Source: Octopus sinensis
Lineage: Eukaryota
NCBI RefSeq assembly: GCF_006345805.1
Contig: NC_043004.1
Span: 66,960,001-67,024,000 of the forward strand
DNA length: 64,000 bases
Reading direction: 5' to 3'
This document shows positions 4,120-57,000 of the stretch, piece by piece; the first letter of the stretch is position 1, and every line of letters begins with the position of its first letter. A program made the translations under genes and the position numbers. The notes below the pieces were generated by a model. The model was not told the DNA's origin. It made no database searches and worked only from the letters and a program-made list of their open reading frames with translations.

Positions 4120-4289
4120 TAGGTGTAGGAGTGGCTGTGTGGTAAGTAGCTTGCTTACGAACCACATGGTCCAGGTCCAGGCCCTCTGCGTGGCACCATG
4201 GGCAAGTGTTTTCTCCTATAGCCTCAGGCGGACCAAAGCCTTGTGAGTGGATTTGGTAGACGGAAACTGAAAGAAGCCCGTCGTATATA

Positions 4290-7283: not shown

Positions 7284-7456
7284 GGGGTGGGGCAGTCGAT
7301 TAGATCGATCCAGTACACCACTGGTACTTAATTTATCGACCCCGAAAGACAAAAGGCAAAGTCGACCTCGGCGGAATTTGAACTTAGAACGTAAAGGCAG
7401 ACGAAACATCGCTAAGTATTTTGCCCAGCGTGGTTACGTTTCTCCCAGCTCACCAC
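7284..7456 (-). mobile_element. SINE family C
   Basis: Reverse complement of gagctgggagaaacgtaacc..aagttcaaattccgccgaggtcgactttgcc..ggggtcgataaattaagtaccag. Confidence 0.8.
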
Positions 7457-9528: not shown

Positions 9529-10701
9529 ATATGAATATATATATAGACACACATATACATATATATTCTATATTATGCATTATGCTCTATCTCCTCATTT
9601 GTAACACGAAAACGTTCATGTTTGTGGGAGGGTTTCTGTGTGTATGCGTATGAGTTTGTGCGTGTGTGTGACTGTGTGCGTGTCTATGTGCATGTAAGTG
9701 CGTGTTTGTGCATCTGCATATTCTGTATATGTCTTGAGAAATGTCAAACCAGCGATAACTAGGTTCATTGCGTTGTACATTCAGACAATAGGAATTAATT
9801 AAAATTGAGCAATGAAATGATTCAGCGAAGAATATGTTGCTCTAACTTGAAAAATGGACAATAGAATGTACAAGATAATTTTATTTTCTAAGAATTAATT
9901 TACACTTAATTACATAAGTTAATTGAATTTAATTTGATCACATCATATTCTTTATTATATTGTCTAGAAGACATTCTGAAACTTATTTAATGTATGTTTT
10001 AACAAGTTGTCTCATGATAACACTGTATCATTTGCATTATTTCAGAAAAGTGCATATTTGGTAACCTAGAGACAGCGGTATTATTGTTACTTGAATATAA
10101 AGCTATTGTGAAGTTGGAAGCGTCGTGTCATAGATGTGTCTTAGAACATACATAATTTTTATAAACGCATAATATATACATACACAGACATACACTCATG
10201 CACACACACACGCACGCACACACACACACACACGCACTTACAAACACATACACACACATATGCATATGAATGAATATATATCCTTATCACATCCTGTTTT
10301 TCAAATTACAAGTCAGCGTGAGTCGGTTGGGTTATGAAATGCAATATATGAAGTCAGTTATTTGGAATACAAACATTCGGTGGTTTTTGTAGGAACGGTT
10401 AATTTCAGATGGAAAAAAGAGAGAAAAGGAAATTGAAAGAAGGGGAAAGATAGAAAATCGCACAAGTGCTAGGAGATGTCGTTGAGTCGTTGGATGATAG
10501 GTTATCCATAATTTTGCATAGGTTAACCTCTGAAATTGAACTGACAGTTCGTAGGGCGGCAACGTACGCATTGATACCTTAACATTCACTCCCATCACAG
10601 GCACTTCATAGCAAACCACATTTAACAGCATAATTGAACACATAAGTAGCAGGAAGATCAGATTATCGATAGAAAATTGATCATGAAGATGCATGAATAA
10701 T

Positions 10702-11104
10702 GGAGTGACTGTGTGGTAAGTAGCTTGCTTACCAACCACATGGTTCCAGGTTCATTCCCACTGGGTGACACCTCGAGCAGCTGTCTTCTACTATTGCTTC
10801 GGGCCGACCAAAGCCTTGTGCGAGGATTTGGCAGACGGAAACTGAACGAAGCCCGTCGTATATATGTTTATATATATGTATGTGTGTGTATATGTATGTG
10901 GGTCTTTGTTTCTCCCCCAACATCGCTTGACAACAGATGGTGGTGTGTTTACGTCCCCGTAACTTAGCGGTTCGGCAAAAGAGACCGATAGAATAAGTAT
11001 TAGGCTATCAACGAATATGTCCTGGGTTCGATTTGCTCGAAAAAAGGCGGTGCTCCAGCATGGCCTCAGTCAAATGACTGAAACAAGTAAAAGAGTAAAA
11101 GAGA
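10702..11104 (+). mobile_element. SINE family B (full length)
   Basis: Same head, body, internal microsatellite and tail as 4120-4577. Confidence 0.9.
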
Positions 11105-11683
11105 GCACTAATCTTAGTAGTAATAGTGAAATTTACTAACTTATACTTTAATAGGAGAATCACTTAGTGCAATTCACTCATTTTCTTTTTCTGTTTATAT
11201 CTTTTCAAATTCTGGAATGATTTACTCAATATTCCATTCACACTTCCGCATTTAATATCTTTGCTTAAAACACATTTTAATGCTAGTATTTTATTTTAGG
11301 AAATATTTGCTGTTTATAACAAATATTTCTTTTTCACTCGAAGATAAAATGTTTCCCTTTTCCTGAAACACAAATCAATTAAATGTTGCTTCAAGACAAT
11401 GAATTTTTCCAGGCAACAAATAGTATTTTTATTGTGTAAGCACCTCTAACAATATATGCACACACATAAGCACACATACGCACATACTCACTCACACATA
11501 CATACACACACACACACACTTACCCACACATACAGACACATGCGTATTTGAGCGCATATACAAATACAAGAAAACACACGCACCTCCACACATATACACA
11601 TTTATAAAATATATATATATATATGTATATACATGGATATGTATATACTATATATATATATATAAAGAGAGAGAGAGAGAGCT

Positions 11684-11690
11684 AGATAGG

Positions 11691-11763
<73 letters not shown>
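11684..11763. repeat. (GATA)n microsatellite
   Basis: Directly visible pure tetranucleotide run. Confidence 0.95.
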
Positions 11764-12864: not shown

Positions 12865-13500
12865 TAATTATTTCAATTCTTCCTGAGAGAAAAGAGTTGG
12901 TTTCAAGGAAAGATGGAAACCTCCATCTTTGAAAAGTATATAACAAAAACAATATCATATTTTAAAATTTTTTTCAAAAATCTTGCATGCTTTTACTGTT
13001 CGATGTACAAATTGTATTCGTCATATGCAATTTGGTTGATTTACCTTTCTGAAAATCCTTGTTTGTCCCATTTGTCAGTGGGGAATTTACTCAGAAAGTC
13101 GAATACTGTTGGTATAAATGGGAATTTATAATCTGGATATAGAAGATAGAAGTGTTGAAGCAGTTATCTATAGTTATCTCCTTTCTCTTTGATATATACG
13201 TCAGCGATCAGCTGACCACTATGATGGTACATACGTTTTCTTGTCTGACCCAAACAACAATATTTGACCTGTTAGGTTTACAGATGACACGTTTTGATTG
13301 CAATGATACACCAATATTCCTTCTCTTAATGTTTCTGCATGAATTCAAAGATAGGGAGATTCTGTATATTTATTCGCGGACAGTCTTTTTTTTCTTCTGA
13401 AAAGCCTTCTGTGTAGTTTTTCTGATGACATCGTGATCATGACATGTGGGACGTCTTCCATGGAAATATGACATTTTAGTTTACATTTTACAGCTGCAGG
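12865..13500 (-). mobile_element. Degenerate RLE-class (R2/NeSL/R4-like) LINE C-terminal fragment
   Basis: Minus strand gives CKLKCHISMEDVPHVM (zinc-finger-like) and KPNRSNIVVWVRQENVCTIIVVS*SL (decayed NRPDIVV..IEVSCP restriction-like endonuclease motif); many stops. Confidence 0.5.
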
Positions 13501-17384: not shown

Positions 17385-17530
17385 ACATGGGACAAGAACG
17401 CAAAAGACAGGTGAAACAAAAAAGGGACAACAAAATATCCATACAGACGATATGAGGAAAACAAGGACGGATCATCGAAGTTTCCTACCATCGGTCGAGT
17501 TCCAGATTATCTTTGCAATTTCGGTTGGTT
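17385..17530 (-). repeat. Second dispersed Penelope-LTR-like mini-repeat
   Basis: Reverse complement of 22490-22650 (aaattgcgaagataatctg..acttcgaatgactcgtcctt..ggatgttttgcgtccttgtccca); partial copy at about 18130-18190. Confidence 0.5.
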
Positions 17531-20191: not shown

Positions 20192-20640
20192 TAGGCACAG
20201 GAGTAGCTGTGTGGTAAGTAGTTTGCTTACCAACCACATGGTTCCGGGTCCAGCCCCACAGCGTAGCACCTTCGGCAAGTGTCTTATTAGTATAAGACAC
20301 AGATATACAGATATAGCCACGGGCCGACGACAGCTTTGTGAGTGCATTTGGTAGACCGAACCTGAAAGAAGCCTGTCGTATATATGTATATATGTACATA
20401 TATAAGTTCATGTGTGTGTGTGTTTGCGTGTCTGTGTTTGTCCCCCCCCACCAACATCGCTTGATAACTGATGGTGGTGTATTTACGTCACTATCACTTA
20501 GCAGTTCGGCAAAATAGATCGATACAATAACAACTAAGCTTACAAAGTGTAAGTCCTGTGGTCGATTTGCTCGACTAAAGACGGTGCTCCAGCATGGCCG
20601 CAGTCAAATGACTGCAACAATTAAAAGAGTAAAAAAGAAT
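20192..20640 (+). mobile_element. SINE family B (full length)
   Basis: Head taggcacaggagtagctgtgtggtaagtagtttgcttac, internal TA/TG run, tail cggtgctccagcatggccgcagtcaaatgact. Confidence 0.9.
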
Positions 20641-30184: not shown

Positions 30185-31011
30185 TATCTCTTTCTGTTTT
30201 CAGCCAGTTGGCTGCTGCGCTTCTGAGGCTCACAAATGTTGCTGCTATTATTTCCCTGCTCCTCCTTTTGTAGTTGGTATTTAATCTTCGAGGGTATTCA
30301 AATTTACTGAGTTTTTTGTCCTTGAACCAGGCTCATCTGAAATTCTAGACAGTAGAGAGTCCAGTTTTGTCTTGGAAATATCTACACCATAGATGTCTTT
30401 CTGTACGATATCTAATAACTCTCACTATTGGATAATGCAATATGTGTTCTTAACTCTGGATGCGGAGGATGAGATATTTGATTTTATGCAATGGCTCTCT
30501 GTTTAATGTTTGGAATAAATTTAAACGCTAAAGTTTGCAACCGGTCCTCGTTCTAGGAACTTTCAGATTTATGGCACGGTATCTGTCACTGTCATTCACT
30601 TTATGGTGTAGAGGCAATCTTTTTGAAATGTTCCTAGTACTTGTCAGTTACACTGGGGCAATCCTTTTTGTGTAGCAGAGTTCAATTGTGTTAGGTTGCA
30701 CCTGCTACGCAGTGATCACGAACAGGGGTAAAATCTGATTACTGTTGACAGGAGAACCGTCTTGATTTCTTGCCCGCTTCCACTCAAATTTCTTGGAACC
30801 CGCCCCCCTAGTCGTTTACATTTCACTGGTGTCTATAGGCGAAGAAGTGGCTCCCTGAGCGCAGGAGTGGATGTGTGGTAAGTAGCTTGCTTACCAACCA
30901 CATGGTTCCGGGTTCAATCCCGCTGCGTGGCACTTTGGGCAAGTGTCTTCTACTATAGCCTCGGGCCGACCAAAGCCGTGTGAGTGGATTTGGCGGATTG
31001 AAACTGGAAGA

Positions 31012-43139: not shown

Positions 43140-44896
43140 TGTTTCTTTATTAGCCACACAGAGCTGCACACAGACAGGACAAATTACAAGGTAGAGTTTT
43201 CTTTTGGGGATAAAAAAAGGGGTTTGGTTTTCGATCAAAAGGGATCGTAAAAGGAAAGAAAGAGCAACAAAAAAGGGGGGATAAAAGATAAAAAGAAAAG
43301 GAAAAAAACGATCAATAGGGATCGTTATCACAGAAATGTCAATATGAAGTGTAAAGGGGAGGACAGGTGAGGTTTACCCGTGGAAAGAAAAGCCTACGGA
43401 AAAGACTACGGTAACCTCTATCAATGAAGTCACATGTTATATTTTTTTACAAATAAGCTACTCTCTGTATTAATTTTTACGGTTCATAGGATCATAGTCA
43501 AGGTGGCTTCGTCATTCATACGTGCCACCCTTGCTACATTCACCCATCTTTTTTTAAAACATTCACTAGACAAAATTTGCCTCTCTACTCTCACTTTCCT
43601 CTTCAAGTGATACTTGAAGTTGATGAGAGATTGACTAGAGAGGAAAGTGTTTGTCTCTAATCCTTTCAGGCGCATCCACCAGATACATTCTTTCGCTATA
43701 GCCACAAGTATGATAAAAATAGCTCTTCCTTCCCGTTTGAAGGAAGGAGGCGTGACGATATTAACGATAGACTCAGCTGATAAACCGACACGTCCCACAC
43801 GTAACAGCAGTTGTTCGACATAAGTCCACAGGTGGGAAATTGCTGGACACTGCACGATTGCGTGCAGAGCGGTTTCGTCGCTCTGCCCGCATCTCGGGCA
43901 GGTCGGCCCCGTGTTTCTCGAGCGATGCCTATAGAGCTTATCCCGAACGGGTAGCGCTTCTCGGTAGCACTGCCAGGCCAGGGATCTCTGGAAGTTGTCC
44001 ATAGGTCCCGGCCCGAAAGTCGTTTCAAACAGGCGGGTCAGGTATACCTCGTCGACGCCCAGGTTTGCCCCAAGATCGTCGTCGTACCTTCCCTCCACTA
44101 ATCCCCTATAGAATGCTTTGGTTGTGTTGAAGTCACTCCACGTCGACCTGGGACGGCAGAGTTGCTTGAGAGCAACGCGACACTCGCGGTGCCATTCGCT
44201 CTTCCTCGGCCTCTTTTTGATCCACGACTGCAGTTCGGTCATGGAGACGAGCTGCGGGAAAGCGTGCCTCACAAACGGCGACCACACCTGTTCACCGTCG
44301 TCTACATAGAGCCGGAGATGTCGCAGTCTCAGCGCGTGTCTGCGCATCATCAGCCACGGCACGCCCAGCCCTACTTGTAACGGGTGTTGACAGCAAATGG
44401 ATCGCCTGACCATCGGGACGCATCCTTTCCAGCGGAAGAGAATGCGTTCTAGTTTGGTGATGGTAGGGTTGGGACAAGGTACGACGGTCAAGCGGTAGTA
44501 GATGATGGACGCGATGTACGTGTTCGCCACCTCCACCCGACCATTTAGGGACAGTTTCCTCTCGGCCCATTGCCGGGCGAGAGTGACCACCCTACTCGTT
44601 TTCTCGTTCCAGTTCTTCTCCATTTGGAGGTCCAGACCGAACCAGACCACGAGCAACTCAACCGGGCCGTCCGTTCAGCGTCCCACGACGGTGGTACTGG
44701 TGGACGGCATCGGCTTGCTTCTCCAGGTGCCGAGCCGCAAGCCCACTGACTTTTCCCGTTTAATTTTCGCTCCTGTCACCGCTTCGTAGTCTTTCAGTGT
44801 CTCGCCGACCAGCTCGGTGTGCTCGTGGCTTGACACTATGACGGTGACGTCGTCCGCGTATGCAGACAGGCTCATCCCGCATCCCAATTCTTGCGG
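43140..44896 (-). mobile_element. 5'-truncated Tx1/L1-clade LINE
   Basis: RT YADD motif, zf-RVT, about 340-nt 3' UTR ending ctaataaagaaac; flanked by GATA/GACA repeats. Confidence 0.9.
43484..44887 (-). pseudogene. Tx1/L1 ORF2 C-terminal half (RT plus zf-RVT)
   Basis: ORFs 44675-44887 (SAYADDVTVIV..GAKIKREKS) and 43484-44656 (..LAWQCYREALPVRDKL..CPRCGQSDETALHAIVQC) are in the same frame, separated only by one TGA (GR*TDGPV, probably TGG). Confidence 0.85.
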
Positions 44897-44903
44897 GATA
44901 GAC

Positions 44904-51879: not shown

Positions 51880-52450
51880 ACGCAACCAAACATGTTACTT
51901 TTGACAATATTTTTCCAAAGAGTGAAACCGGTAAAGTAAGTAAATATCTTTTAAAATTGCATTTCCAAACCTTCTTTCGTAAACAATTCCACTCGTGCGG
52001 TACCCCACAACTCCACTTTGTTATATATAAACATCACATGAGTCCCGAAAATTCCACCTAAGTCACAACAAGCAGAAATTTAATGAACCAAAATATCCTA
52101 AGAGAATTACAAGAAATCTCCTCGAAACTTTCAACCCTAATCAACAAAGTCCAACAATCGCACTTATACCTAAATGGACTCCTGGAGGCTAAAACAGTCA
52201 ATCAAACCCCTGACATCATCCCAACACTACAAAATCTAATTAAATCTATAGAGACAACAATACTCCCAAAGCAGGAACAAACTAAAGACTGCCTCTCAGT
52301 TTAAAACACTCTTAACAACACCTGGATTAAAAACCTCAAAGCACGCAAATTTGCTTTCTGGAACATCATAAAAAATAATAACAAAGCAGACATTTATGAA
52401 AAGTCGCTCAACTCCACCCCTATCATTCTACCCAGAAAACTGCAAATAAT
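51880..52450 (+). mobile_element. Probable retroelement coding relic (family unresolved)
   Basis: A/C-rich stretch encoding MNQNILRELQEISS..(52083-52304) and TWIKNLKARKFAFWNIIKNNNKADIYEKSLNSTPIILPRKLQI; no catalytic motif visible. Confidence 0.3.
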
Positions 52451-52552
52451 CTTTTGCCAAACCGCTAAGTTACAGGGACGTAAACACACCAGCATCGGTT
52501 GTCAAGCGATGTTGCGGGGACAAACACAGACACACAAACGTATACACACACG

Positions 52553-52590
<38 letters not shown>

Positions 52591-52745
52591 TATTTATATA
52601 TATGCGACGGACTTCTTTCAGTTTCCGTCTACCAAATCCACTCACAAGGCTTTGGTCAGCCAGAGGCTATACTAAAATACATTTGCCCAAGGTATCACGC
52701 AGTGGGACTGAACTCGGAACCATGTGGATCGTAAGGAATCTACTT
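52451..52745 (-). mobile_element. SINE family B, body and B-box half of a split copy
   Basis: Reverse complement of the SINE-B body up to ..ccatgtggatcgtaaggaatctactt, where it is interrupted. Confidence 0.9.
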
Positions 52746-54774
52746 TATTTCATAAAATTTGTCATCATAGACAGTACAAAGAGTGTGTAGCTTTGCGGGC
52801 TGGACAAACACATTAATGAATGAAAATGAAATAGAATGAATAAATGAGAGACGAAACCCAACACCCGCCGATTGGAGTTTTCTCGAAAGCATATTTTCTT
52901 TTTTAAAAAATCAATATGAGGTTTCAAACTTCTTACAAGAAGGAGGCACTAAAACCTCTTACTTAACGTGTGCTTTTGGGTTTTTTTAAACACACAATTG
53001 AGGTTATAAACCACTACAAATAATACAATAAGATGAGGTTTCAAACCATATAACGAGGGTCTTTCACCTCCTACTCTTCGATATATCCATCGATATATTC
53101 ATCATTATCTTCAATGCCGCTTGAGTTCCTGTATCCCGCCATTTCCCATGCCTCATTCATGTAGAACGTGTAAGTCGTGTAAGGGCCACCCGGCCATATG
53201 CGACACTCCTCCCCAAATCCTTTAAGCCTTTCCCACAAGGGAAACCTTATGACCTCCACAGCTATCTGCGGAGGCCATTCGGGATCCCGTGTGAAGGGCA
53301 TATCTACTGTCTCTTTATGTTCTTCTACTATTTTTTCCACCTCCCCGCCCTTATAGAAAAAAGATAATTAATTGGGCATCTTTAAGGGTGGGGGTGTTTT
53401 CTTCCACCGTGGGTGGTACAACTTCGGGGCATGCAGACGGCACATCATCTCCCCGCTGAGACGACCTGTTCTTCTTCCTTTTTTTTCTTTTCTTCCTGAC
53501 TTCGGGAGAGTGGAGCACTTCCGCTTTGTCCGGAGACTCTCCCCCGCCTCCCGAAGCCTTAGGTTCCTTTTTAATCCTTTTTGAGTTGAGGAGGCTGAAG
53601 CATCCTCGACCACATCCACCTCTCCCTTTGAACGGGTAGGGGAGGTGGAATCTAGTGACTGTTCCAGGACCTTACCATGGTCCTTGGGGCAGTTCCTTTT
53701 AATGTGGCCGGGTTGCAGGCACGAGTGACACTTGGGGGGACGTCCCTCAAGTATCACCGGATACCTGAGGCCAGCCATTTTCAAGAAATCTGGAAAAACC
53801 AGATCTGTTGCGGCCGATGGGGTCCACAGGGTCAAAATCGCTTTTGATCCTTCCCAATCGACCGCCGGCAATACCCTTACATTTAAGAGCCTGTGGCCGC
53901 CATCCCCCAGTCTCTGTCGGATGGTATCTTCAATTCAATCCGCTTCGGTGCCTGGTGGTAACCTACATACCCAGACTCGTATTAATTTTCTCCCACAATA
54001 TGACGGAAGGAACAGCATTTCCTTGCCTTCTAAAGGCTGACTCGCAAATTAGCGAGCCTTTTCCCCGTTGTCAAGCAGCAACCATACGGTTGCATGCTTG
54101 ACACCACGAGATATATATTTTAAAGAGGATAAATATTCTTTAAGTTCATTTTTTATGACATGTTTTGGGAAGACGGTGATGGAATTAAAAACTTCAGAAT
54201 AAGTTCTAAGTATCATCGTCTCCTCCTCCATATCTTTTAACCACTGCTTATGCGGGTTGATTTCCCACTCTACGACAGAGTTTTTTTTTTTAAGTTCCTT
54301 CTCTGCCATTTCAAAAAACAGTTCAGAAGTAGTTCAAAAGAGAGTCTGCAAAAAAATTACACCGAATAAAAAATAAAACAAAATAAAAGAGGAGAGGGGG
54401 AAACTGAAATTAAAGTAATGAAAAGAATGAACCAAAATTTAGAAAGAAAGAAAAATAGGAGGGAAAAGTAAAAGAAAAACCTCACAAATAGCACAGACAG
54501 GGAATCCTTTGTATAATACTCCAAAAAAGTAATCCAAATGGCTTTTTCTTATTTTTCTGGTGAGATACGCCCACTAGAATTTACAAGAAGAATTTTCAAG
54601 CAAAAATTCTCAATTCACCGTTACAGTGATGAGAACCCAGTATTTGGCTCGCTATAGCGAGTCATAATTGACAATATTTCTTTTTGTTGTTTTTTTCTAT
54701 TCACGGAGCCGAAACTCACATCTTCTCACTGTAACAGTCAAGACCAACAAGTGTTGCATTCTGGGTAACCGTAA
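52746..54774 (-). mobile_element. ORF1-only (zinc-knuckle) non-autonomous L1/Tx1-like retroelement, copy 1 (about 2.0 kb)
   Basis: 5' UTR about 465 nt, ORF1 from ATG 54309, 3' UTR ending atgaaata; no EN or RT sequence; bounded by the 15-nt target repeat. Confidence 0.75.
53071..54309 (-). pseudogene. ORF1p/Gag-like protein with CCHC zinc knuckle (copy 1; frameshifts and stop)
   Basis: MAEKELKKK..ILRTYSEVFNSITVFPK..YISRGVK; ..LPSYCGRKLIRVWVCRLPPG; GRPPKCHSCLQPGHIKRNCP (CX2CX4HX4C at 53689-53730); basic low-complexity tail, then an acidic ORF at 53071-53340. Confidence 0.7.
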
Positions 54775-54789
54775 GTAAGCAAGCTACTT

Positions 54790-56462
54790 TATTTCATAAA
54801 ATTTGTCATATAGACAGTACAAAGATTGTGTAGCTTTGAGGGCTGGACAAACACATTAATGAATGAAAATGAAATGAAATGAATAAATGAGAGACGAAAC
54901 CCAACACCCGCCGATCGGATTGTTCTCGAAAATATATTTTCTTTTTTTAAAAATCAATATGAGGTTTCAAAACTCTTAGAATTGTTGTAAATATATGTGC
55001 TGCCCTTGTGGCAAATTAAATTAAATAAAGTAGCTTGTAAGATGTTTTAGTCCCACTTGCGGCTCCGTCGGCGGCCCAGGAACAACCGCCGACCGTCCTA
55101 TGCTCCACTTTTTCCTCTCTCTTTTTGATGCTGCGGGAGCAGGGGGCTGCGTCGACAGACGCAGGGGCGTCGTTACCCTCCTCCGCCGCCTGTACATTCT
55201 TTGGTGAGCAACCATTGTTGATCACCTTCCTTTTTCTTTTCGTGGAGGAAGTTGCCTCCACGACTTCCACCATCTCCCTCTCCAATGAATGGGCGGCGGG
55301 CATTTCCTCTTTTTCATGCTGCAGGGCCTTACCACGGCCATCGGTACAGTTCTTACTGATATGGCCAGGCTCCAGGCACAGGTGACATTGGGGGGGCGTC
55401 CCTTAAGTATCACCGGGTACCTGTATCCGGCCATTTTTAGGAAGTCTGGGAATGTCATATCTCCCACGGCCACCGGGGTCCACAGGGTCAAAGTTGACTT
55501 TGACCCCTCCCAGTCGACCGCGGGAGTAATCTTTACACTCAATAGCCTGGGCCCGGATGGTCTCCTCGATCCACCCGCTTCCGTGCCCGGGGGCAACCCG
55601 CATACTCAGGCACTTCTTATCTTCCTTCCGCAATAAGTGGAGAGGAACAAAATTTCATCTCCCTCAGGGGGCTCGCTAGCAATTCTGCTAGCTTCCTCGG
55701 GTGTACCAAAGAGCACACACACCGATGCAAATTTGGTCCCCCGTGAAATAAATTTTATAGTTGGCAGGTAGTCTGCCAACCCTCTCTCTATTACGCTCTT
55801 GTCGAAGAGGGCGATGGCACCACACGGCCTAGAATAGGTTCGTAGTACCACACTCCTCTTCTCAAGATCTTTAATCCACTGTTTGGGAGGGAGAACCTCC
55901 TACTCCAAGGCAGTGGCTTCATTCTTCCTTACCATGTGTAAAAAGTTCAAACAAAGTTCACACTAGATTTAGAAATGAAGAAAGATACAAAAAAGAAAGA
56001 AGACACAACAGAAGGGAAGAAAAAATAAAATAACAGTTCAATAAAGTTTTTGTTCCAAACCAAATGATAGACATGAAGAAGAGTTCAAATGATAACAAAG
56101 AAAACAATTTTCGGCCGAAAGGTACTCCTTTCCACAGAAATTTTCAAAAAACAATTTCTCACAATTATGTGAGAGAACACACACGTCTCCACCGCAAGGC
56201 AGACAAAAAGCTCCGAATCCAGTAAGGACTCTTTGCTAGTACAAAAAGATAAACCTACAAGCAACAAATCCTACTGGACTCAAGGAGCAAAAGGTCTTAC
56301 CTTACAGTAGAGCGTCTTTTAATTCTCGTCCGCTGCACACCAGCGTGACGACTTCAACAGGTGCGTGAAGAACACTTTTTGTTATTTTTTCTTTTTAGGA
56401 TGGAGCTCAAATTTCACGTCCTCACTGCTCACTGGCAAGAAGTCGACTAGACGCGCATGAGC
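54790..56462 (-). mobile_element. ORF1-only non-autonomous L1/Tx1-like retroelement, copy 2 (about 1.7 kb)
   Basis: Homologous ORF1 from ATG 55935; last about 185 nt nearly identical to copy 1; no RT. Confidence 0.75.
55016..55935 (-). pseudogene. ORF1p/Gag-like protein with CCHC zinc knuckle (copy 2; frameshifts and stops)
   Basis: KQWIKDLEKRSVVLRTYS..KFISRGTKFASV..LSTYCGRK; PAVDWEGSKSTLTLWTP..FPDFLKMAGYRYPVILKGRPP; CHLCLEPGHISKNC at 55346-55387 after a 1-nt frameshift. Confidence 0.7.
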
Positions 56463-56500
56463 GGAAGCAACTACTTACCACACAGCCACTCCTACGCCTA
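56463..56500 (-). mobile_element. SINE family B, 5' head (A-box half) of the split copy
   Basis: Reverse complement taggcgtaggagtggctgtgtggtaagtagttgcttcc matches the SINE-B 5' end seen at 4120-4158. Confidence 0.85.
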
Positions 56501-57000
56501 TATTATATCATGTAATATATTTTAGATGGAGTGATGAAGTTAAAAACGTGTTCGTGTTGTGTAGTTAATCGCAAAGAATCACGAAGATATGTTTGTTTTG
56601 GTACGTTGTTCGAGACGAGCAAAACACAACATAATTTTGGCATTGTCAATAGTGCTTCTGTAGTTGTGATCCTATGTAGGAGGGAAAAGTTTCTTGAGGT
56701 ATACCAAGATTGCAAAATCAGTGAGTATAGAAGCGTAGAATTGTTAAACTTTTAGAGTGAATGTAACTTTACTTGTTCTGTCTATGCTCTGAATTCAAAT
56801 ACCAACAAACACAAATTTATTTTCCATTATAACCGGAACGATAAAAGATAATTGATCCGTTTGATCAGTGCCAGTGTTGGACCCCCTATTCACTATAATG
56901 GCCTGAAATTCCCAGTACCTAGAGGTTGTGTGTATATACATACATATAGATGTGTATGTGTGTTTTAGACATATGTGTACAGGCACACACATACACTCCA

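What the first reader, a model, noticed from the sequence alone, without database searches (positions are those of the whole stretch)
52451..56500. Two ORF1-only retroelements stacked at one exact site inside a SINE's tRNA head: candidate SINE-targeting non-autonomous Tx1-like system
Seen in sequence, reading the minus strand: SINE-B head (56500-56477), 15-mer aagtagttgcttcc (56476-56463), element 2, 15-mer aagtagcttgcttac (54789-54775, perfect match to the intact SINE), element 1, 15-mer aagtagattccttac (52745-52731), then the rest of SINE-B. Intact SINE-B copies carry this 15-mer once (4144-4158, 10718-10732, 20216-20230, 30880-30894). Both inserts are in the same orientation, have related 5' ends, encode only a CCHC zinc-knuckle ORF1-like protein with no room for EN/RT, and end ..atgaaata directly on the target. 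The site lies between the A-box (tggctgtgtgg) and B-box (ggttc.gtccc), so insertion separates the SINE Pol III promoter. Established: Tx1-clade LINEs are often sequence-specific (tRNA/snRNA genes, microsatellites, other transposons), repeated insertion at a fixed target gives head-to-tail stacks with a duplicated target, and ORF1/Gag-only derivatives exist (HAL1, HeT-A). Inference: this is an ORF1-only family mobilised in trans by a site-specific Tx1 EN-RT whose target is a high-copy SINE head, a parasite of a parasite. Two independent hits at the same nucleotide by two divergent subfamilies are hard to explain by chance.
Basis: partly seen in the sequence, partly recalled or inferred. Interest (0 to 1): 0.9.

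Follow-up and report, generated by a model that had tools for sequence, protein, structure and literature searches.

The report
Gag-only retroelements stacked inside an octopus SINE
Two decayed, reverse-transcriptase-less retroelements sit head to tail at one exact nucleotide position inside an octopus SINE, and two relatives elsewhere in Octopus join the same SINE position, so this is probably a non-autonomous, SINE-targeting offshoot of the site-specific L1/Tx1-type LINEs, a new combination of known behaviours.

Summary
On the minus strand the order is SINE head, a 12-14-nt target copy, element e2 (about 1.67 kb), a perfect 15-mer, element e1 (2.03 kb), a 15-mer with two mismatches, then the rest of the SINE.

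- **No ORF2.** Both elements encode only an ORF1 protein, with two RRM-like domains and a CCHC knuckle. There is no room for endonuclease or reverse transcriptase.
- **Family.** Its only detectable relatives are cephalopod, and it is rare in protein databases.
- **Same site elsewhere.** Two more copies at unrelated Octopus sinensis loci (e3, e4) are joined to the same SINE head at the same nucleotide.
- **Selection.** ORF1 dN/dS among the four copies is 0.09-0.28, so ORF2-less lineages kept a working ORF1 while they diverged.
- **Relatives.** The nearest ORF1 relatives belong to octopus LINEs with APE, RT and zf-RVT. These sit between matching microsatellites or form head-to-tail arrays.

Weak points:
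- e3 and e4 lack the 3' tail and the downstream SINE body.
- No autonomous partner was found.
- No genome-wide junction count was possible.
- Neither ARAGORN nor Rfam calls the SINE head a tRNA.

This is a new variant of a known kind, comparable to Tx1L/Tx1D, Tx1-Mar/SINEU and HAL1.

The parts
56465..56499 (-). Head of the split SINE (SINE positions about 1-29), carrying the A-box-like motif TGGCTGTGTGG
   Evidence: blastn SINE positions 2-31 = 56493..56465. One search compares it with 7 uninterrupted copies.
56463..56476 (-). Upstream copy of the target, AAGTAG-TTGCTT, followed by CC. The CC is probably the first two bases of e2.
   Evidence: In one search, 3 of 3 element-linked heads read GCTTCC and 7 of 7 intact SINEs read G(C/T)TTAC.
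54790..56462 (-). Element e2, about 1.67 kb: 5'UTR about 530 nt, decayed ORF1, internal deletion of the middle region, 3' tail
55016..55934 (-). e2 ORF1 remnant (two RRM-like domains plus CCHC), with 2 in-frame stops and at least 3 frameshifts
54990..55037 (-). Inside e2: an inverted copy of the element's own 3' end plus 10 nt of target. It includes a 15-nt exact match, CAAGCTACTTTATTT. Unexplained.
   Evidence: I1: 48 nt, 77% complementary; I6
54790..54981 (-). e2 3' tail module, ending ...TTTTATGAAATA. AATAAA spans the element/target junction.
   Evidence: 92.7% identity to the e1 tail; D1 and D7
54775..54789 (-). Middle target copy AAGTAGCTTGCTTAC, a perfect match to the SINE consensus
52746..54774 (-). 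Element e1, 2029 nt: 5'UTR about 465 nt, ORF1, middle region, 3' tail
53368..54309 (-). e1 ORF1, a single frame of 313 codons with in-frame stops at 54051-54049 and 53937-53935. The knuckle is CHSCLQPGHIKRNC.
53251..53287 (-). 37-nt block identical between e1 and e4 (O. sinensis). It folds into a 13-bp hairpin and lies in the non-coding-looking middle region.
52746..52938 (-). e1 3' tail module
52731..52745 (-). Downstream target copy AAGTAGATTCCTTAC (2 mismatches), continuous with the SINE body
52451..52745 (-). Remainder of the split SINE: B-box-like GGTTCCGAGTTCAGTCCC, body, (TA)n(TG)n and part of the 3' region. It is 3'-truncated at ...GGCAAAAGA.

Best explanation
e1 and e2 are two diverged members of an octopod-restricted family of non-autonomous non-LTR retroelements about 2 kb long.

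**What they keep and lack.** They keep a 5'UTR, a Type-I ORF1 (two RRM-like domains plus a CCHC knuckle) and a 3' tail. They have no endonuclease or reverse transcriptase.

**Proposed mechanism.**
- They are copied by target-primed reverse transcription, using the EN-RT of an unidentified sequence-specific L1/Tx1-type LINE.
- That enzyme nicks one defined site in the head of the abundant octopus SINE: the bottom strand opposite GGT(A)|AAGTAG, and the top strand 13-15 nt downstream, after GCTT(AC).
- Repeated use of this site, or a template jump from one element RNA to the next during a single integration, gives the stack: SINE head, target, e2, target, e1, target, SINE body.
- The insertion puts about 3.7 kb between the A-box-like and B-box-like motifs of that SINE copy.

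**Shown:**
- the anatomy and the target duplication;
- the absence of ORF2;
- the ORF1 fold class;
- purifying selection on ORF1;
- recurrence of the same SINE junction at three loci.

**Inferred:**
- trans-mobilisation by a partner;
- the exact nick positions;
- that element RNAs end a few nucleotides into the target, because AATAAA spans the junction, and anneal there.
For: **Anatomy.**
- Split SINE with a 13-15-nt overlap.
- The 15-mer is far above chance.
- Both inserts end identically on AAGTAG (D7).

**Recurrence of the junction.**
- Three unrelated loci carry the SINE head cut at the same nucleotide directly 5' of a family member: e2 in the window, e3 at L001 9463-9488, and e4 at L003 15719-15744. 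Their flanks are unrelated.
- All 7 uninterrupted SINE copies in hand read ...TTAC-CAACC there.

**No ORF2.**
- Complete units are only 1.7-2.0 kb.
- e1 and e4 share the same ORF1-plus-middle-region layout.

**ORF1 protein.**
- zf-CCHC by Pfam.
- The AlphaFold model has pLDDT 81.5, with two alpha/beta domains.
- Its best PDB matches are tandem-RRM proteins, at E about 1e-5.
- This matches Type-I ORF1p, which the literature associates with Tx1-type elements (PMC5203782).

**Selection.** ORF1 dN/dS is 0.09-0.28, with pS 0.5-0.75, among e1-e4.

**Relatives.**
- phmmer over 1.84 billion representatives gives 47 hits. All named ones are cephalopod.
- The nearest, P0002, is the ORF1 of a LINE with APE, RT and zf-RVT that is flanked on both sides by (ATT)n.
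- A fragment of the same LINE family lies in the window between (CTAT)n runs.
- Related LINEs in L029 and L030 form head-to-tail arrays.

**Literature.**
- Tx1-clade LINEs target other transposons and microsatellites, and non-autonomous elements share their targets (PMC4494074).
- O. vulgaris has 13 recently active L1-Tx1 families (PMC13282606).
Against: - e3 and e4 have neither the e1/e2-type 3' tail nor any SINE body downstream. The 3' junction on the SINE is therefore seen only in this window.
- All three full 5' junctions read GCTTCC where the SINE has GCTTAC. This could mean that the head travels with the element.
- The three target copies are not identical. The middle one matches the consensus perfectly, and the downstream one has 2 mismatches.
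- No LINE with the same tail or target was found. The tails of the LINEs in hand do not align with the e tail.
- Only four copies of the family could be examined. No genome-wide count was possible.
- The 93% identity between the e1 and e2 tails could reflect local gene conversion between neighbours rather than constraint.
Confidence: 0.6

Rival explanations
1. The first 29 nt or so of SINE sequence are part of the element itself. They would be a 5' leader acquired once by co-transcription, 5' transduction or template switching, and inherited since. Under this reading the elements are not SINE-specific. The window arrangement would arise because reverse transcription of a SINE RNA, and then of e1 RNA, switched templates at the shared AAGTAG...microhomology.
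For: - e3 and e4 carry the head but no SINE body downstream.
- All three heads share the CC that is not in the SINE consensus.
- e3 and e4 share an A-to-C change in the head.
- 5' extensions and target-derived heads are documented for Tx1-associated elements (PMC4494074).
Against: - In the window, e1's 3' end is followed by the SINE from exactly the position where the head stops, with a 13-15-nt overlap. e1 itself is preceded by only that 15-mer. This needs two breaks at the same nucleotide.
- The heads are 86-94% identical to the SINE consensus, while the adjacent 5'UTRs of e2, e3 and e4 barely align. That is unexpected if both were inherited together without constraint.
- Copies made by target-primed reverse transcription should be 3'-complete. 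The missing 3' ends of e3 and e4 therefore need a secondary event under this model too.
Confidence: 0.22
2. A single ancient insertion into this SINE was followed by local tandem duplication or unequal crossing-over and then long divergence. There would be no family-level site specificity.
For: The two units are adjacent and in the same orientation. Their tails are much more alike than their bodies, as gene conversion between neighbours could produce.
Against: - ORF1 synonymous sites between e1 and e2 are near saturation (pS 0.62) while dN/dS is 0.24. The divergence therefore took place under selection in active lineages, not in situ.
- e1 is closer to e3 of O. sinensis than to its neighbour e2: 71% against 68% nucleotide identity and 58% against 53% amino-acid identity to P0001.
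- The same junction recurs at two other loci.
Confidence: 0.05
3. These are merely dead, internally deleted copies of an ordinary full-length LINE. They do not form a self-propagating ORF1-only family.
For: Non-LTR elements often suffer internal deletions. e2 has lost about 400 nt relative to e1.
Against: - Copies from different lineages and species (e1, e4) share the same ORF2-less layout, including a 37-nt identical block in the middle region.
- ORF1 was under purifying selection during their divergence.
- No closer ORF1 attached to an ORF2 exists among 1.84 billion representatives.
- The middle region shows no similarity to LINE ORF2 termini.
Confidence: 0.08
4. An LTR-type element: the two 193-nt tails would be LTRs flanking a gag-only internal region.
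For: There are 172-193-nt direct repeats at 92% identity, 2043 nt apart, and the ORF between them is CCHC gag-like.
Against: - There is no repeat copy upstream of e2, e3 or e4.
- There are no TG...CA ends and no tRNA-3'-end primer-binding site next to the repeat.
- The protein has an RRM-type LINE ORF1 fold, not a retroviral capsid fold.
- Each unit is body plus tail, as in a head-to-tail non-LTR array.
Confidence: 0.02

Closest known systems
Tx1L in Tx1D (Xenopus) and other Tx1-clade target-specific LINEs: Keno in U2 snRNA genes, Kibi and Koshi in microsatellites, Tx1-Mar in Mariner-N4_AMi (PMC4494074)
   Same: - Insertion at a fixed site inside another repeated sequence, including other transposons.
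- Same orientation and a target duplication.
- ORF1 with RRM plus CCHC.
- The related octopus LINEs seen here lie between matching microsatellites and form head-to-tail arrays.
   Different: - The elements here have no ORF2 at all.
- The target is a SINE head. None of the targets listed in the sections of PMC4494074 that I read is a SINE.
- No RT is available for a clade assignment.
SINEU mobilised by Tx1-Mar in crocodilians (Kojima 2015, PMC4494074)
   Same: - A non-autonomous element that shares the target preference of a Tx1-type LINE for another transposon.
- Target- or RNA-gene-derived sequence at the 5' end.
- No partner with an identical 3' tail was found there either.
   Different: SINEU is short and non-coding. 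The octopus elements are about 2 kb and keep a selected ORF1.
HAL1 (half-L1) of mammals (Bao and Jurka 2010, as cited in PMC4494074)
   Same: A LINE-derived family that retains ORF1 but lacks ORF2 and propagates in trans.
   Different: From my own knowledge, not tested here:
- HAL1 carries the Type-II (Transposase_22) ORF1.
- It uses a poly(A) tail.
- It is not site-specific.
HeT-A of Drosophila telomeres (my own knowledge, not tested here)
   Same: - A Gag-only non-LTR element maintained long-term.
- Head-to-tail arrays at a defined kind of site.
- Dependence on an RT supplied in trans.
   Different: - HeT-A belongs to the Jockey clade.
- It targets chromosome ends rather than an internal sequence.
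- It has a host function.
R2 and R1 co-transcription with the target, and template jumping (cited in PMC4494074)
   Same: Target-derived sequence at the element ends could guide precise 5' and 3' joining. End-to-end template jumps could give tandem units.
   Different: - R2 uses a restriction-like endonuclease and rDNA targets.
- No ribozyme was detected at the e 5' ends.

Membership tests
Non-LTR retroelement of the L1/Tx1 lineage (non-autonomous derivative) | Type-I ORF1 protein: RRM domain(s) followed by a CCHC zinc knuckle | tested here: met
   zf-CCHC in e1 and e2. The AlphaFold model of P0001 shows two alpha/beta domains plus a knuckle. Foldseek top hits are tandem-RRM proteins at E about 1e-5. 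The definition is taken from PMC5203782.
Non-LTR retroelement of the L1/Tx1 lineage (non-autonomous derivative) | ORF2 with APE endonuclease and reverse transcriptase | tested here: not met
   Complete units are 1.67 and 2.03 kb. No EN or RT ORF is present. The element is therefore non-autonomous, not a LINE proper.
Non-LTR retroelement of the L1/Tx1 lineage (non-autonomous derivative) | Placement in the Tx1 clade by RT phylogeny | not testable with these tools
   The elements have no RT. The nearest ORF1 relatives sit in LINEs with APE, RT and zf-RVT, but those were not placed on a reference tree.
Non-LTR retroelement of the L1/Tx1 lineage (non-autonomous derivative) | Insertion anchored at the 3' end with a target-site duplication; no LTRs or TIRs | tested here: met
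   A 13-15-nt duplication flanks e1 and e2. There are no terminal inverted repeats or LTR structure.
Sequence-specific (target-specific) retroelement | Most copies lie at the same nucleotide of the same target sequence | tested here: inconclusive
   Of the 5' junctions, 3 of 3 with a SINE head (e2, e3, e4) are at the same position, and e1 sits on the 15-mer. Of the preserved 3' ends, 2 of 2 (e1, e2) are on AAGTAG. However, there are only 4 copies, and e3 and e4 lack their 3' ends.
Sequence-specific (target-specific) retroelement | An autonomous partner that shares the target and/or the 3' tail | tested here: inconclusive
   None was found in about 245 kb of octopus DNA in hand. The tails of the available LINEs do not align. 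The genome itself could not be searched.
ORF1-only LINE derivative (HAL1-like) | ORF1 retained and under purifying selection, with ORF2 absent across the family | tested here: met
   dN/dS is 0.09-0.28 among e1-e4. The ORF2-less layout is shared by e1 and e4.
ORF1-only LINE derivative (HAL1-like) | Descent from mammalian-type L1 (Type-II ORF1, Transposase_22) | tested here: not met
   Pfam finds only zf-CCHC, with no Transposase_22. It works like HAL1 but is not a member.
tRNA-derived SINE (the host element) | The head is recognisable as a tRNA with A and B boxes | tested here: inconclusive
   A-box-like TGGCTGTGTGG and B-box-like GGTTCAATCCC are visible. ARAGORN finds no tRNA in the window, and Rfam gives no tRNA hit on an intact copy.
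LTR retrotransposon | LTRs at both ends, a primer-binding site, and gag with a capsid fold | tested here: not met
   There is no repeat upstream of e2, e3 or e4. The protein has an RRM-type fold.

The most novel reading that the evidence does not exclude
A long-lived, octopod-specific lineage of Gag-only retroelements survives without its own reverse transcriptase. It would do so by keeping a selected two-RRM/CCHC protein and by carrying target-derived sequence on its RNA ends. Those ends, rather than only the partner's endonuclease, would then guide integration into the promoter region of the genome's most abundant SINE. Each insertion would knock out a SINE copy. This would be a three-level chain of parasitism (LINE, Gag-only rider, SINE target) with RNA-guided site choice.
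Probability: 0.12. Interest if true: 0.8.

Novelty: new variant of a known kind. Interest (0 to 1): 0.5.

Why it matters
Each ingredient is known separately: site-specific non-LTR elements that target other transposons, non-autonomous riders that share a partner's target, and ORF1-only LINE derivatives. I found no description of the three combined, that is, an ORF1-only family under purifying selection that lands at one nucleotide inside a SINE's promoter region.

If a genome-wide count confirms it, three things follow:
- Cephalopod genomes are about 12% SINE and carry active L1-Tx1 families (PMC13282606). They would gain a tractable case of nested parasitism.
- It would be a natural test of what ORF1p contributes when ORF2p is borrowed.
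- It would give a defined DNA target for studying how APE-type endonucleases, or RNA-end annealing, achieve sequence specificity.

It would also matter for repeat annotation in octopus. Such composites are easily split into 'unknown' repeats and broken SINEs.

Tried and rejected
1. **Ribozyme at the 5' ends.** I tested for an R2- or HDV-like or hammerhead ribozyme. An Rfam E-value scan of 52000-57000 found only microsatellite-driven miRNA noise.

2. **More family copies through proteins.**
   - Three word-index searches were run: e1 ORF1, a profile of e1, e2 and P0001, and a profile of the middle region.
   - They returned only P0001, or nothing.
   - The exhaustive phmmer search added one chimeric gene model, P0015, which led to e4.

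3. **Metagenome DNA scans.** The scan for the 3' junction gave 0 hits. The scan for the 5' junction gave 14 hits, all unrelated chance matches.

4. **Middle region as an ORF2 remnant.**
   - BLASTP against two LINE ORF2 C-termini gave nothing significant.
   - Pfam found no family.
   - dN/dS was 0.76 with no frame signal.
   - I rejected it as demonstrably coding.

5. **Shared 3' tail with the LINEs in hand.** There is no alignment above shuffles with the window LINE or the L002 LINE. With the second ORF1-only family (L011, L012), only a 28-nt TTCATTTCATT-type motif is shared (z = 6.5-7.6 for e2, about 3 for e1). That is suggestive only.

6. **A claim I made and withdrew.** I first noted that the L011/L012 ORF1-only elements sit in (TA)n. 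I withdrew this because a palindromic MITE-like element lies between the (TA)n and the element, and a 17-nt direct repeat, GCTGGGTTCG.CTA, flanks the L011 copy. Their target is undecided.

7. **Other checks.**
   - The LTR-element reading was rejected.
   - Synteny between the window and L001 was excluded.
   - A search for the missing SINE remainder downstream of e3 and e4, using body and 3' probes, found none.

Full report
**Source and context**

The window is AT-rich eukaryotic DNA, crowded with one SINE that carries an internal (TA)n(TG)n run. Every named relative of the proteins studied here comes from Octopus sinensis, O. vulgaris, O. bimaculoides or Argonauta. The window is therefore octopod.

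**Checking the observation**

The order on the minus strand is:
- SINE head, 56499..56465
- AAGTAG-TTGCTT followed by CC, 56476..56463
- e2, to 54790
- AAGTAGCTTGCTTAC, 54789..54775
- e1, 54774..52746
- AAGTAGATTCCTTAC, 52745..52731
- the SINE body, running on without a break to about 52451

Further checks:
- blastn with an intact copy maps SINE positions 2-31 to the head and 19-236 to the body. This is one SINE split with a 13-15-nt duplicated overlap.
- The 15-mer with up to 2 mismatches occurs 6 times in the window against 0.13 expected. The other four hits each lie once in an uninterrupted SINE.
- e1 and e2 share a 193-nt 3' tail at 92.7% identity, but their ORF1 regions are only 68% identical. 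No other copy exists in the window. An assembly duplication is excluded.
- Corrections: the first repeat is 14 nt and ends CC, the boundaries are ambiguous by 1-2 nt, and e1's 5' end aligns poorly with e2's.
- The SINE head shows A-box-like and B-box-like motifs. ARAGORN and the Rfam tRNA model do not call it a tRNA.

**What the elements encode**

- e1 has one 313-codon frame with two in-frame stops. e2 has the same protein broken by two stops and at least three frameshifts.
- Pfam sees only zf-CCHC.
- The one annotated relative, P0001 (O. sinensis LOC115225585, 281 aa), is 58% identical to e1 and 53% to e2. Its first knuckle cysteine is replaced by phenylalanine.
- An AlphaFold model of P0001, built on 30 homologues, has mean pLDDT 81.5. 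It shows two alpha/beta domains followed by the knuckle.
- Its best PDB matches are tandem-RRM proteins (SFPQ, NONO, hnRNP A1 UP1) at E about 1e-5.
- This is the Type-I ORF1p architecture, which the literature links to L1- and Tx1-type elements outside mammals (PMC5203782).
- Units of 1.67 and 2.03 kb leave no room for an endonuclease or reverse transcriptase.
- No ribozyme or other Rfam family is present.

**Other copies**

Protein searches are nearly blind to this family. Two further copies could still be fetched from O. sinensis:
- e3 (L001, the P0001 locus)
- e4 (L003, found through a chimeric gene model)

Their flanks are unrelated to the window.

Both are preceded, in the same orientation, by a SINE head that stops at the same nucleotide as in the window:
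- e2: ...GTGTGGTAAGTAG-TTGCTT CC GCTCATGCGCG
- e3: ...GTGTGGTAAGTAGCTTGCTT CC TGTGCATGCG
- e4: ...GTGTGGTAAGAAGTTTGCTT CC ACTGCGCATGTGCG

All seven uninterrupted SINE copies in hand continue ...TTAC CAACCACATGG. The link between this family and one SINE position is therefore real and recurrent.

The weak point is that e3 breaks off about 130 nt after ORF1, and e4 about 150 nt before the expected 3' end. Neither is followed by the e1/e2 tail or by any SINE body.

**Is the family a functioning ORF1-only lineage?**

- In pairwise comparisons of the 220 conserved ORF1 codons among e1-e4, synonymous sites are near saturation (pS 0.50-0.75). Non-synonymous differences are 0.17-0.26, giving dN/dS of 0.09-0.28. 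The lineages therefore diverged while the protein was under purifying selection.
- e1 and e4 share the same layout after ORF1. This is a middle region in the -1 frame, without coding signal (dN/dS 0.76, no frame preference, no homologues).
- That region contains a 37-nt block identical between the two copies, which folds into a 13-bp hairpin (-29 kcal/mol, z = -5.4).
- e2 has lost this region.
- The ORF2-less architecture is thus shared across deep divergence. It is not a private deletion.

**Relatives and setting**

An exhaustive phmmer search of 1.84 billion representatives gave only 47 hits, at 22-36% identity.

*LINEs with an ORF2:*
- The nearest hit, P0002, is the ORF1 of a nearly complete LINE in L002 with APE, RT and zf-RVT pieces. 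It is flanked on both sides by (ATT)n.
- A 5'-truncated copy of the same LINE family lies in this window at 44900..43140, between (CTAT)n runs.
- LINEs carrying P0007 (L029) and P0010 (L030) form head-to-tail arrays of two or three units.

*A second ORF1-only group:*
- P0008 and P0011 (L011, L012; O. vulgaris) are about 2 kb with no ORF2 following. Their target is undecided.

*What this shows:*
- The genome thus hosts a radiation of L1/Tx1-type LINEs that sit between matching repeats or stack head to tail, plus more than one ORF2-less derivative.
- This fits published knowledge. Tx1-clade elements target microsatellites, small RNA genes and other transposons. Non-autonomous SINEU elements share the Mariner target of Tx1-Mar (PMC4494074).
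- O. vulgaris has 13 recently active L1-Tx1 families (PMC13282606).

**Mechanism**

The most economical reading is target-primed reverse transcription by a borrowed, sequence-specific EN-RT. It would nick the SINE opposite GGT(A)|AAGTAG and again 13-15 nt downstream.

- In both e1 and e2, an AATAAA signal spans the element/target junction (gaAATAAAgtag).
- In the L029 LINE and the other related LINEs, AATAAA lies 5-12 nt before the element end.
- By inference, transcripts end a few nucleotides into the target and can anneal to the nicked site. This would explain the precise, poly(A)-less junctions.
- The tandem may come from two successive insertions, or from one event with an end-to-end template jump. 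The data do not decide.
- The middle 15-mer matches the SINE consensus perfectly, whereas the downstream copy of this old, diverged SINE has two mismatches. That leans slightly towards an RNA-borne origin of the middle copy. My estimate is that two later substitutions in 15 nt have a chance of about 8%, so this is not excluded.

**Rivals**

- The main rival is that the SINE head belongs to the element (0.22). It explains e3 and e4, and the shared CC. It needs two breaks at the same nucleotide to explain the window. It also does not explain why the heads stay 86-94% like the SINE consensus while the adjacent UTRs have diverged beyond alignment.
- Local duplication, private deletion derivatives and an LTR element are disfavoured.

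**Novelty and score**

- Each ingredient is known. The combination of a selected ORF1-only family with a SINE head as its fixed target is, as far as I could find, undescribed. I rate it a new variant of a known kind, with interest 0.5.
Nested, target-specific Tx1 systems with non-autonomous riders are already published, and the decisive genome-wide census and the partner are still missing.

Noticed in passing
window 43140-44900 (minus strand): A 5'-truncated L1/Tx1-type LINE: a 390-aa ORF2 C-terminus with zf-RVT, lying between (CTAT)n runs on both sides, with AATAAA 7 nt before its end. It belongs to the same family as the near-complete LINE in L002, which is flanked on both sides by (ATT)n. 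Candidate microsatellite-targeting LINEs.
   Followed up: partly
L029 6900-14300 (O. sinensis) and L030 7700-14600 (O. bimaculoides): Full-length LINEs (ORF1 plus APE plus RT plus zf) in head-to-tail tandem arrays. There are three units in L029, with junctions near 7326 and 12637, and two units in L030, with a junction near 13395. Only a few nucleotides separate the units.
   Followed up: partly
L011 ~9900-11660 and L012 ~9850-11700 (O. vulgaris): A second ORF2-less family of about 2 kb (ORF1 = P0008 and P0011, about 30% identical to the e ORF1). The L011 copy is flanked by a 17-nt direct repeat, GCTGGGTTCG(T/G)CTA. The same motif sits at the LINE-LINE junction of L030 and in the 5'UTR of the L002 LINE. 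A palindromic MITE-like element lies just upstream in L011, L012 and L030. The target is undecided.
   Followed up: partly
window 53251-53287 (minus strand); L003 ~17483-17519: A 37-nt block, GGATCCCGAATGGCCTCCGCAGATAGCTGTGGAGGTC, is identical between e1 and e4 although the surrounding sequence is about 66% identical. It forms a 13-bp hairpin (-29 kcal/mol, z = -5.4). It is a possible cis-acting RNA element. It is absent from e2.
   Followed up: partly
window 54990-55037 versus 54780-54827: e2 contains an inverted copy of its own last 38 nt or so plus the first 10 nt of the downstream target. It starts about 160 nt upstream of that segment and includes a 15-nt exact match. An RNA reading through into the target could close its 3'UTR into a long stem. 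It was not found in e1.
   Followed up: no
window 52744-52749 and 54788-54793 (minus strand): A canonical AATAAA is created across the element/target junction (gaAATAAAgtag) in both e1 and e2. The related LINEs carry AATAAA 5-12 nt before their 3' ends.
   Followed up: no
window 52499-52528 versus 52783-52812 and 54826-54855: The SINE's 3' region and the e tails share a TGTGTTTGTCC-containing box (67-70% over 30 nt). Similar TGTTTGTCC or TTGTCCC boxes occur in the tails of the related LINEs. This could hint that the SINE and these elements use related RT recognition sequences, or it could be chance next to (TG)n.
   Followed up: no
P0001 (L001 10001-10846): The only intact annotated ORF of the family has phenylalanine in place of the first cysteine of the CCHC knuckle (KFHLCLEPGHIKKNC). 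It may therefore not be functional despite the open frame.
   Followed up: no
L004 1-1930 and L005-L010 (Logan contigs, SRR118693xx): Contigs from sequencing runs of an unidentified organism carry intact distant ORF1 homologues. L004 continues into the start of an APE ORF2 (MSICLGCLNVKGLRS), so at least some LINEs of this group appear intact there.
   Followed up: no
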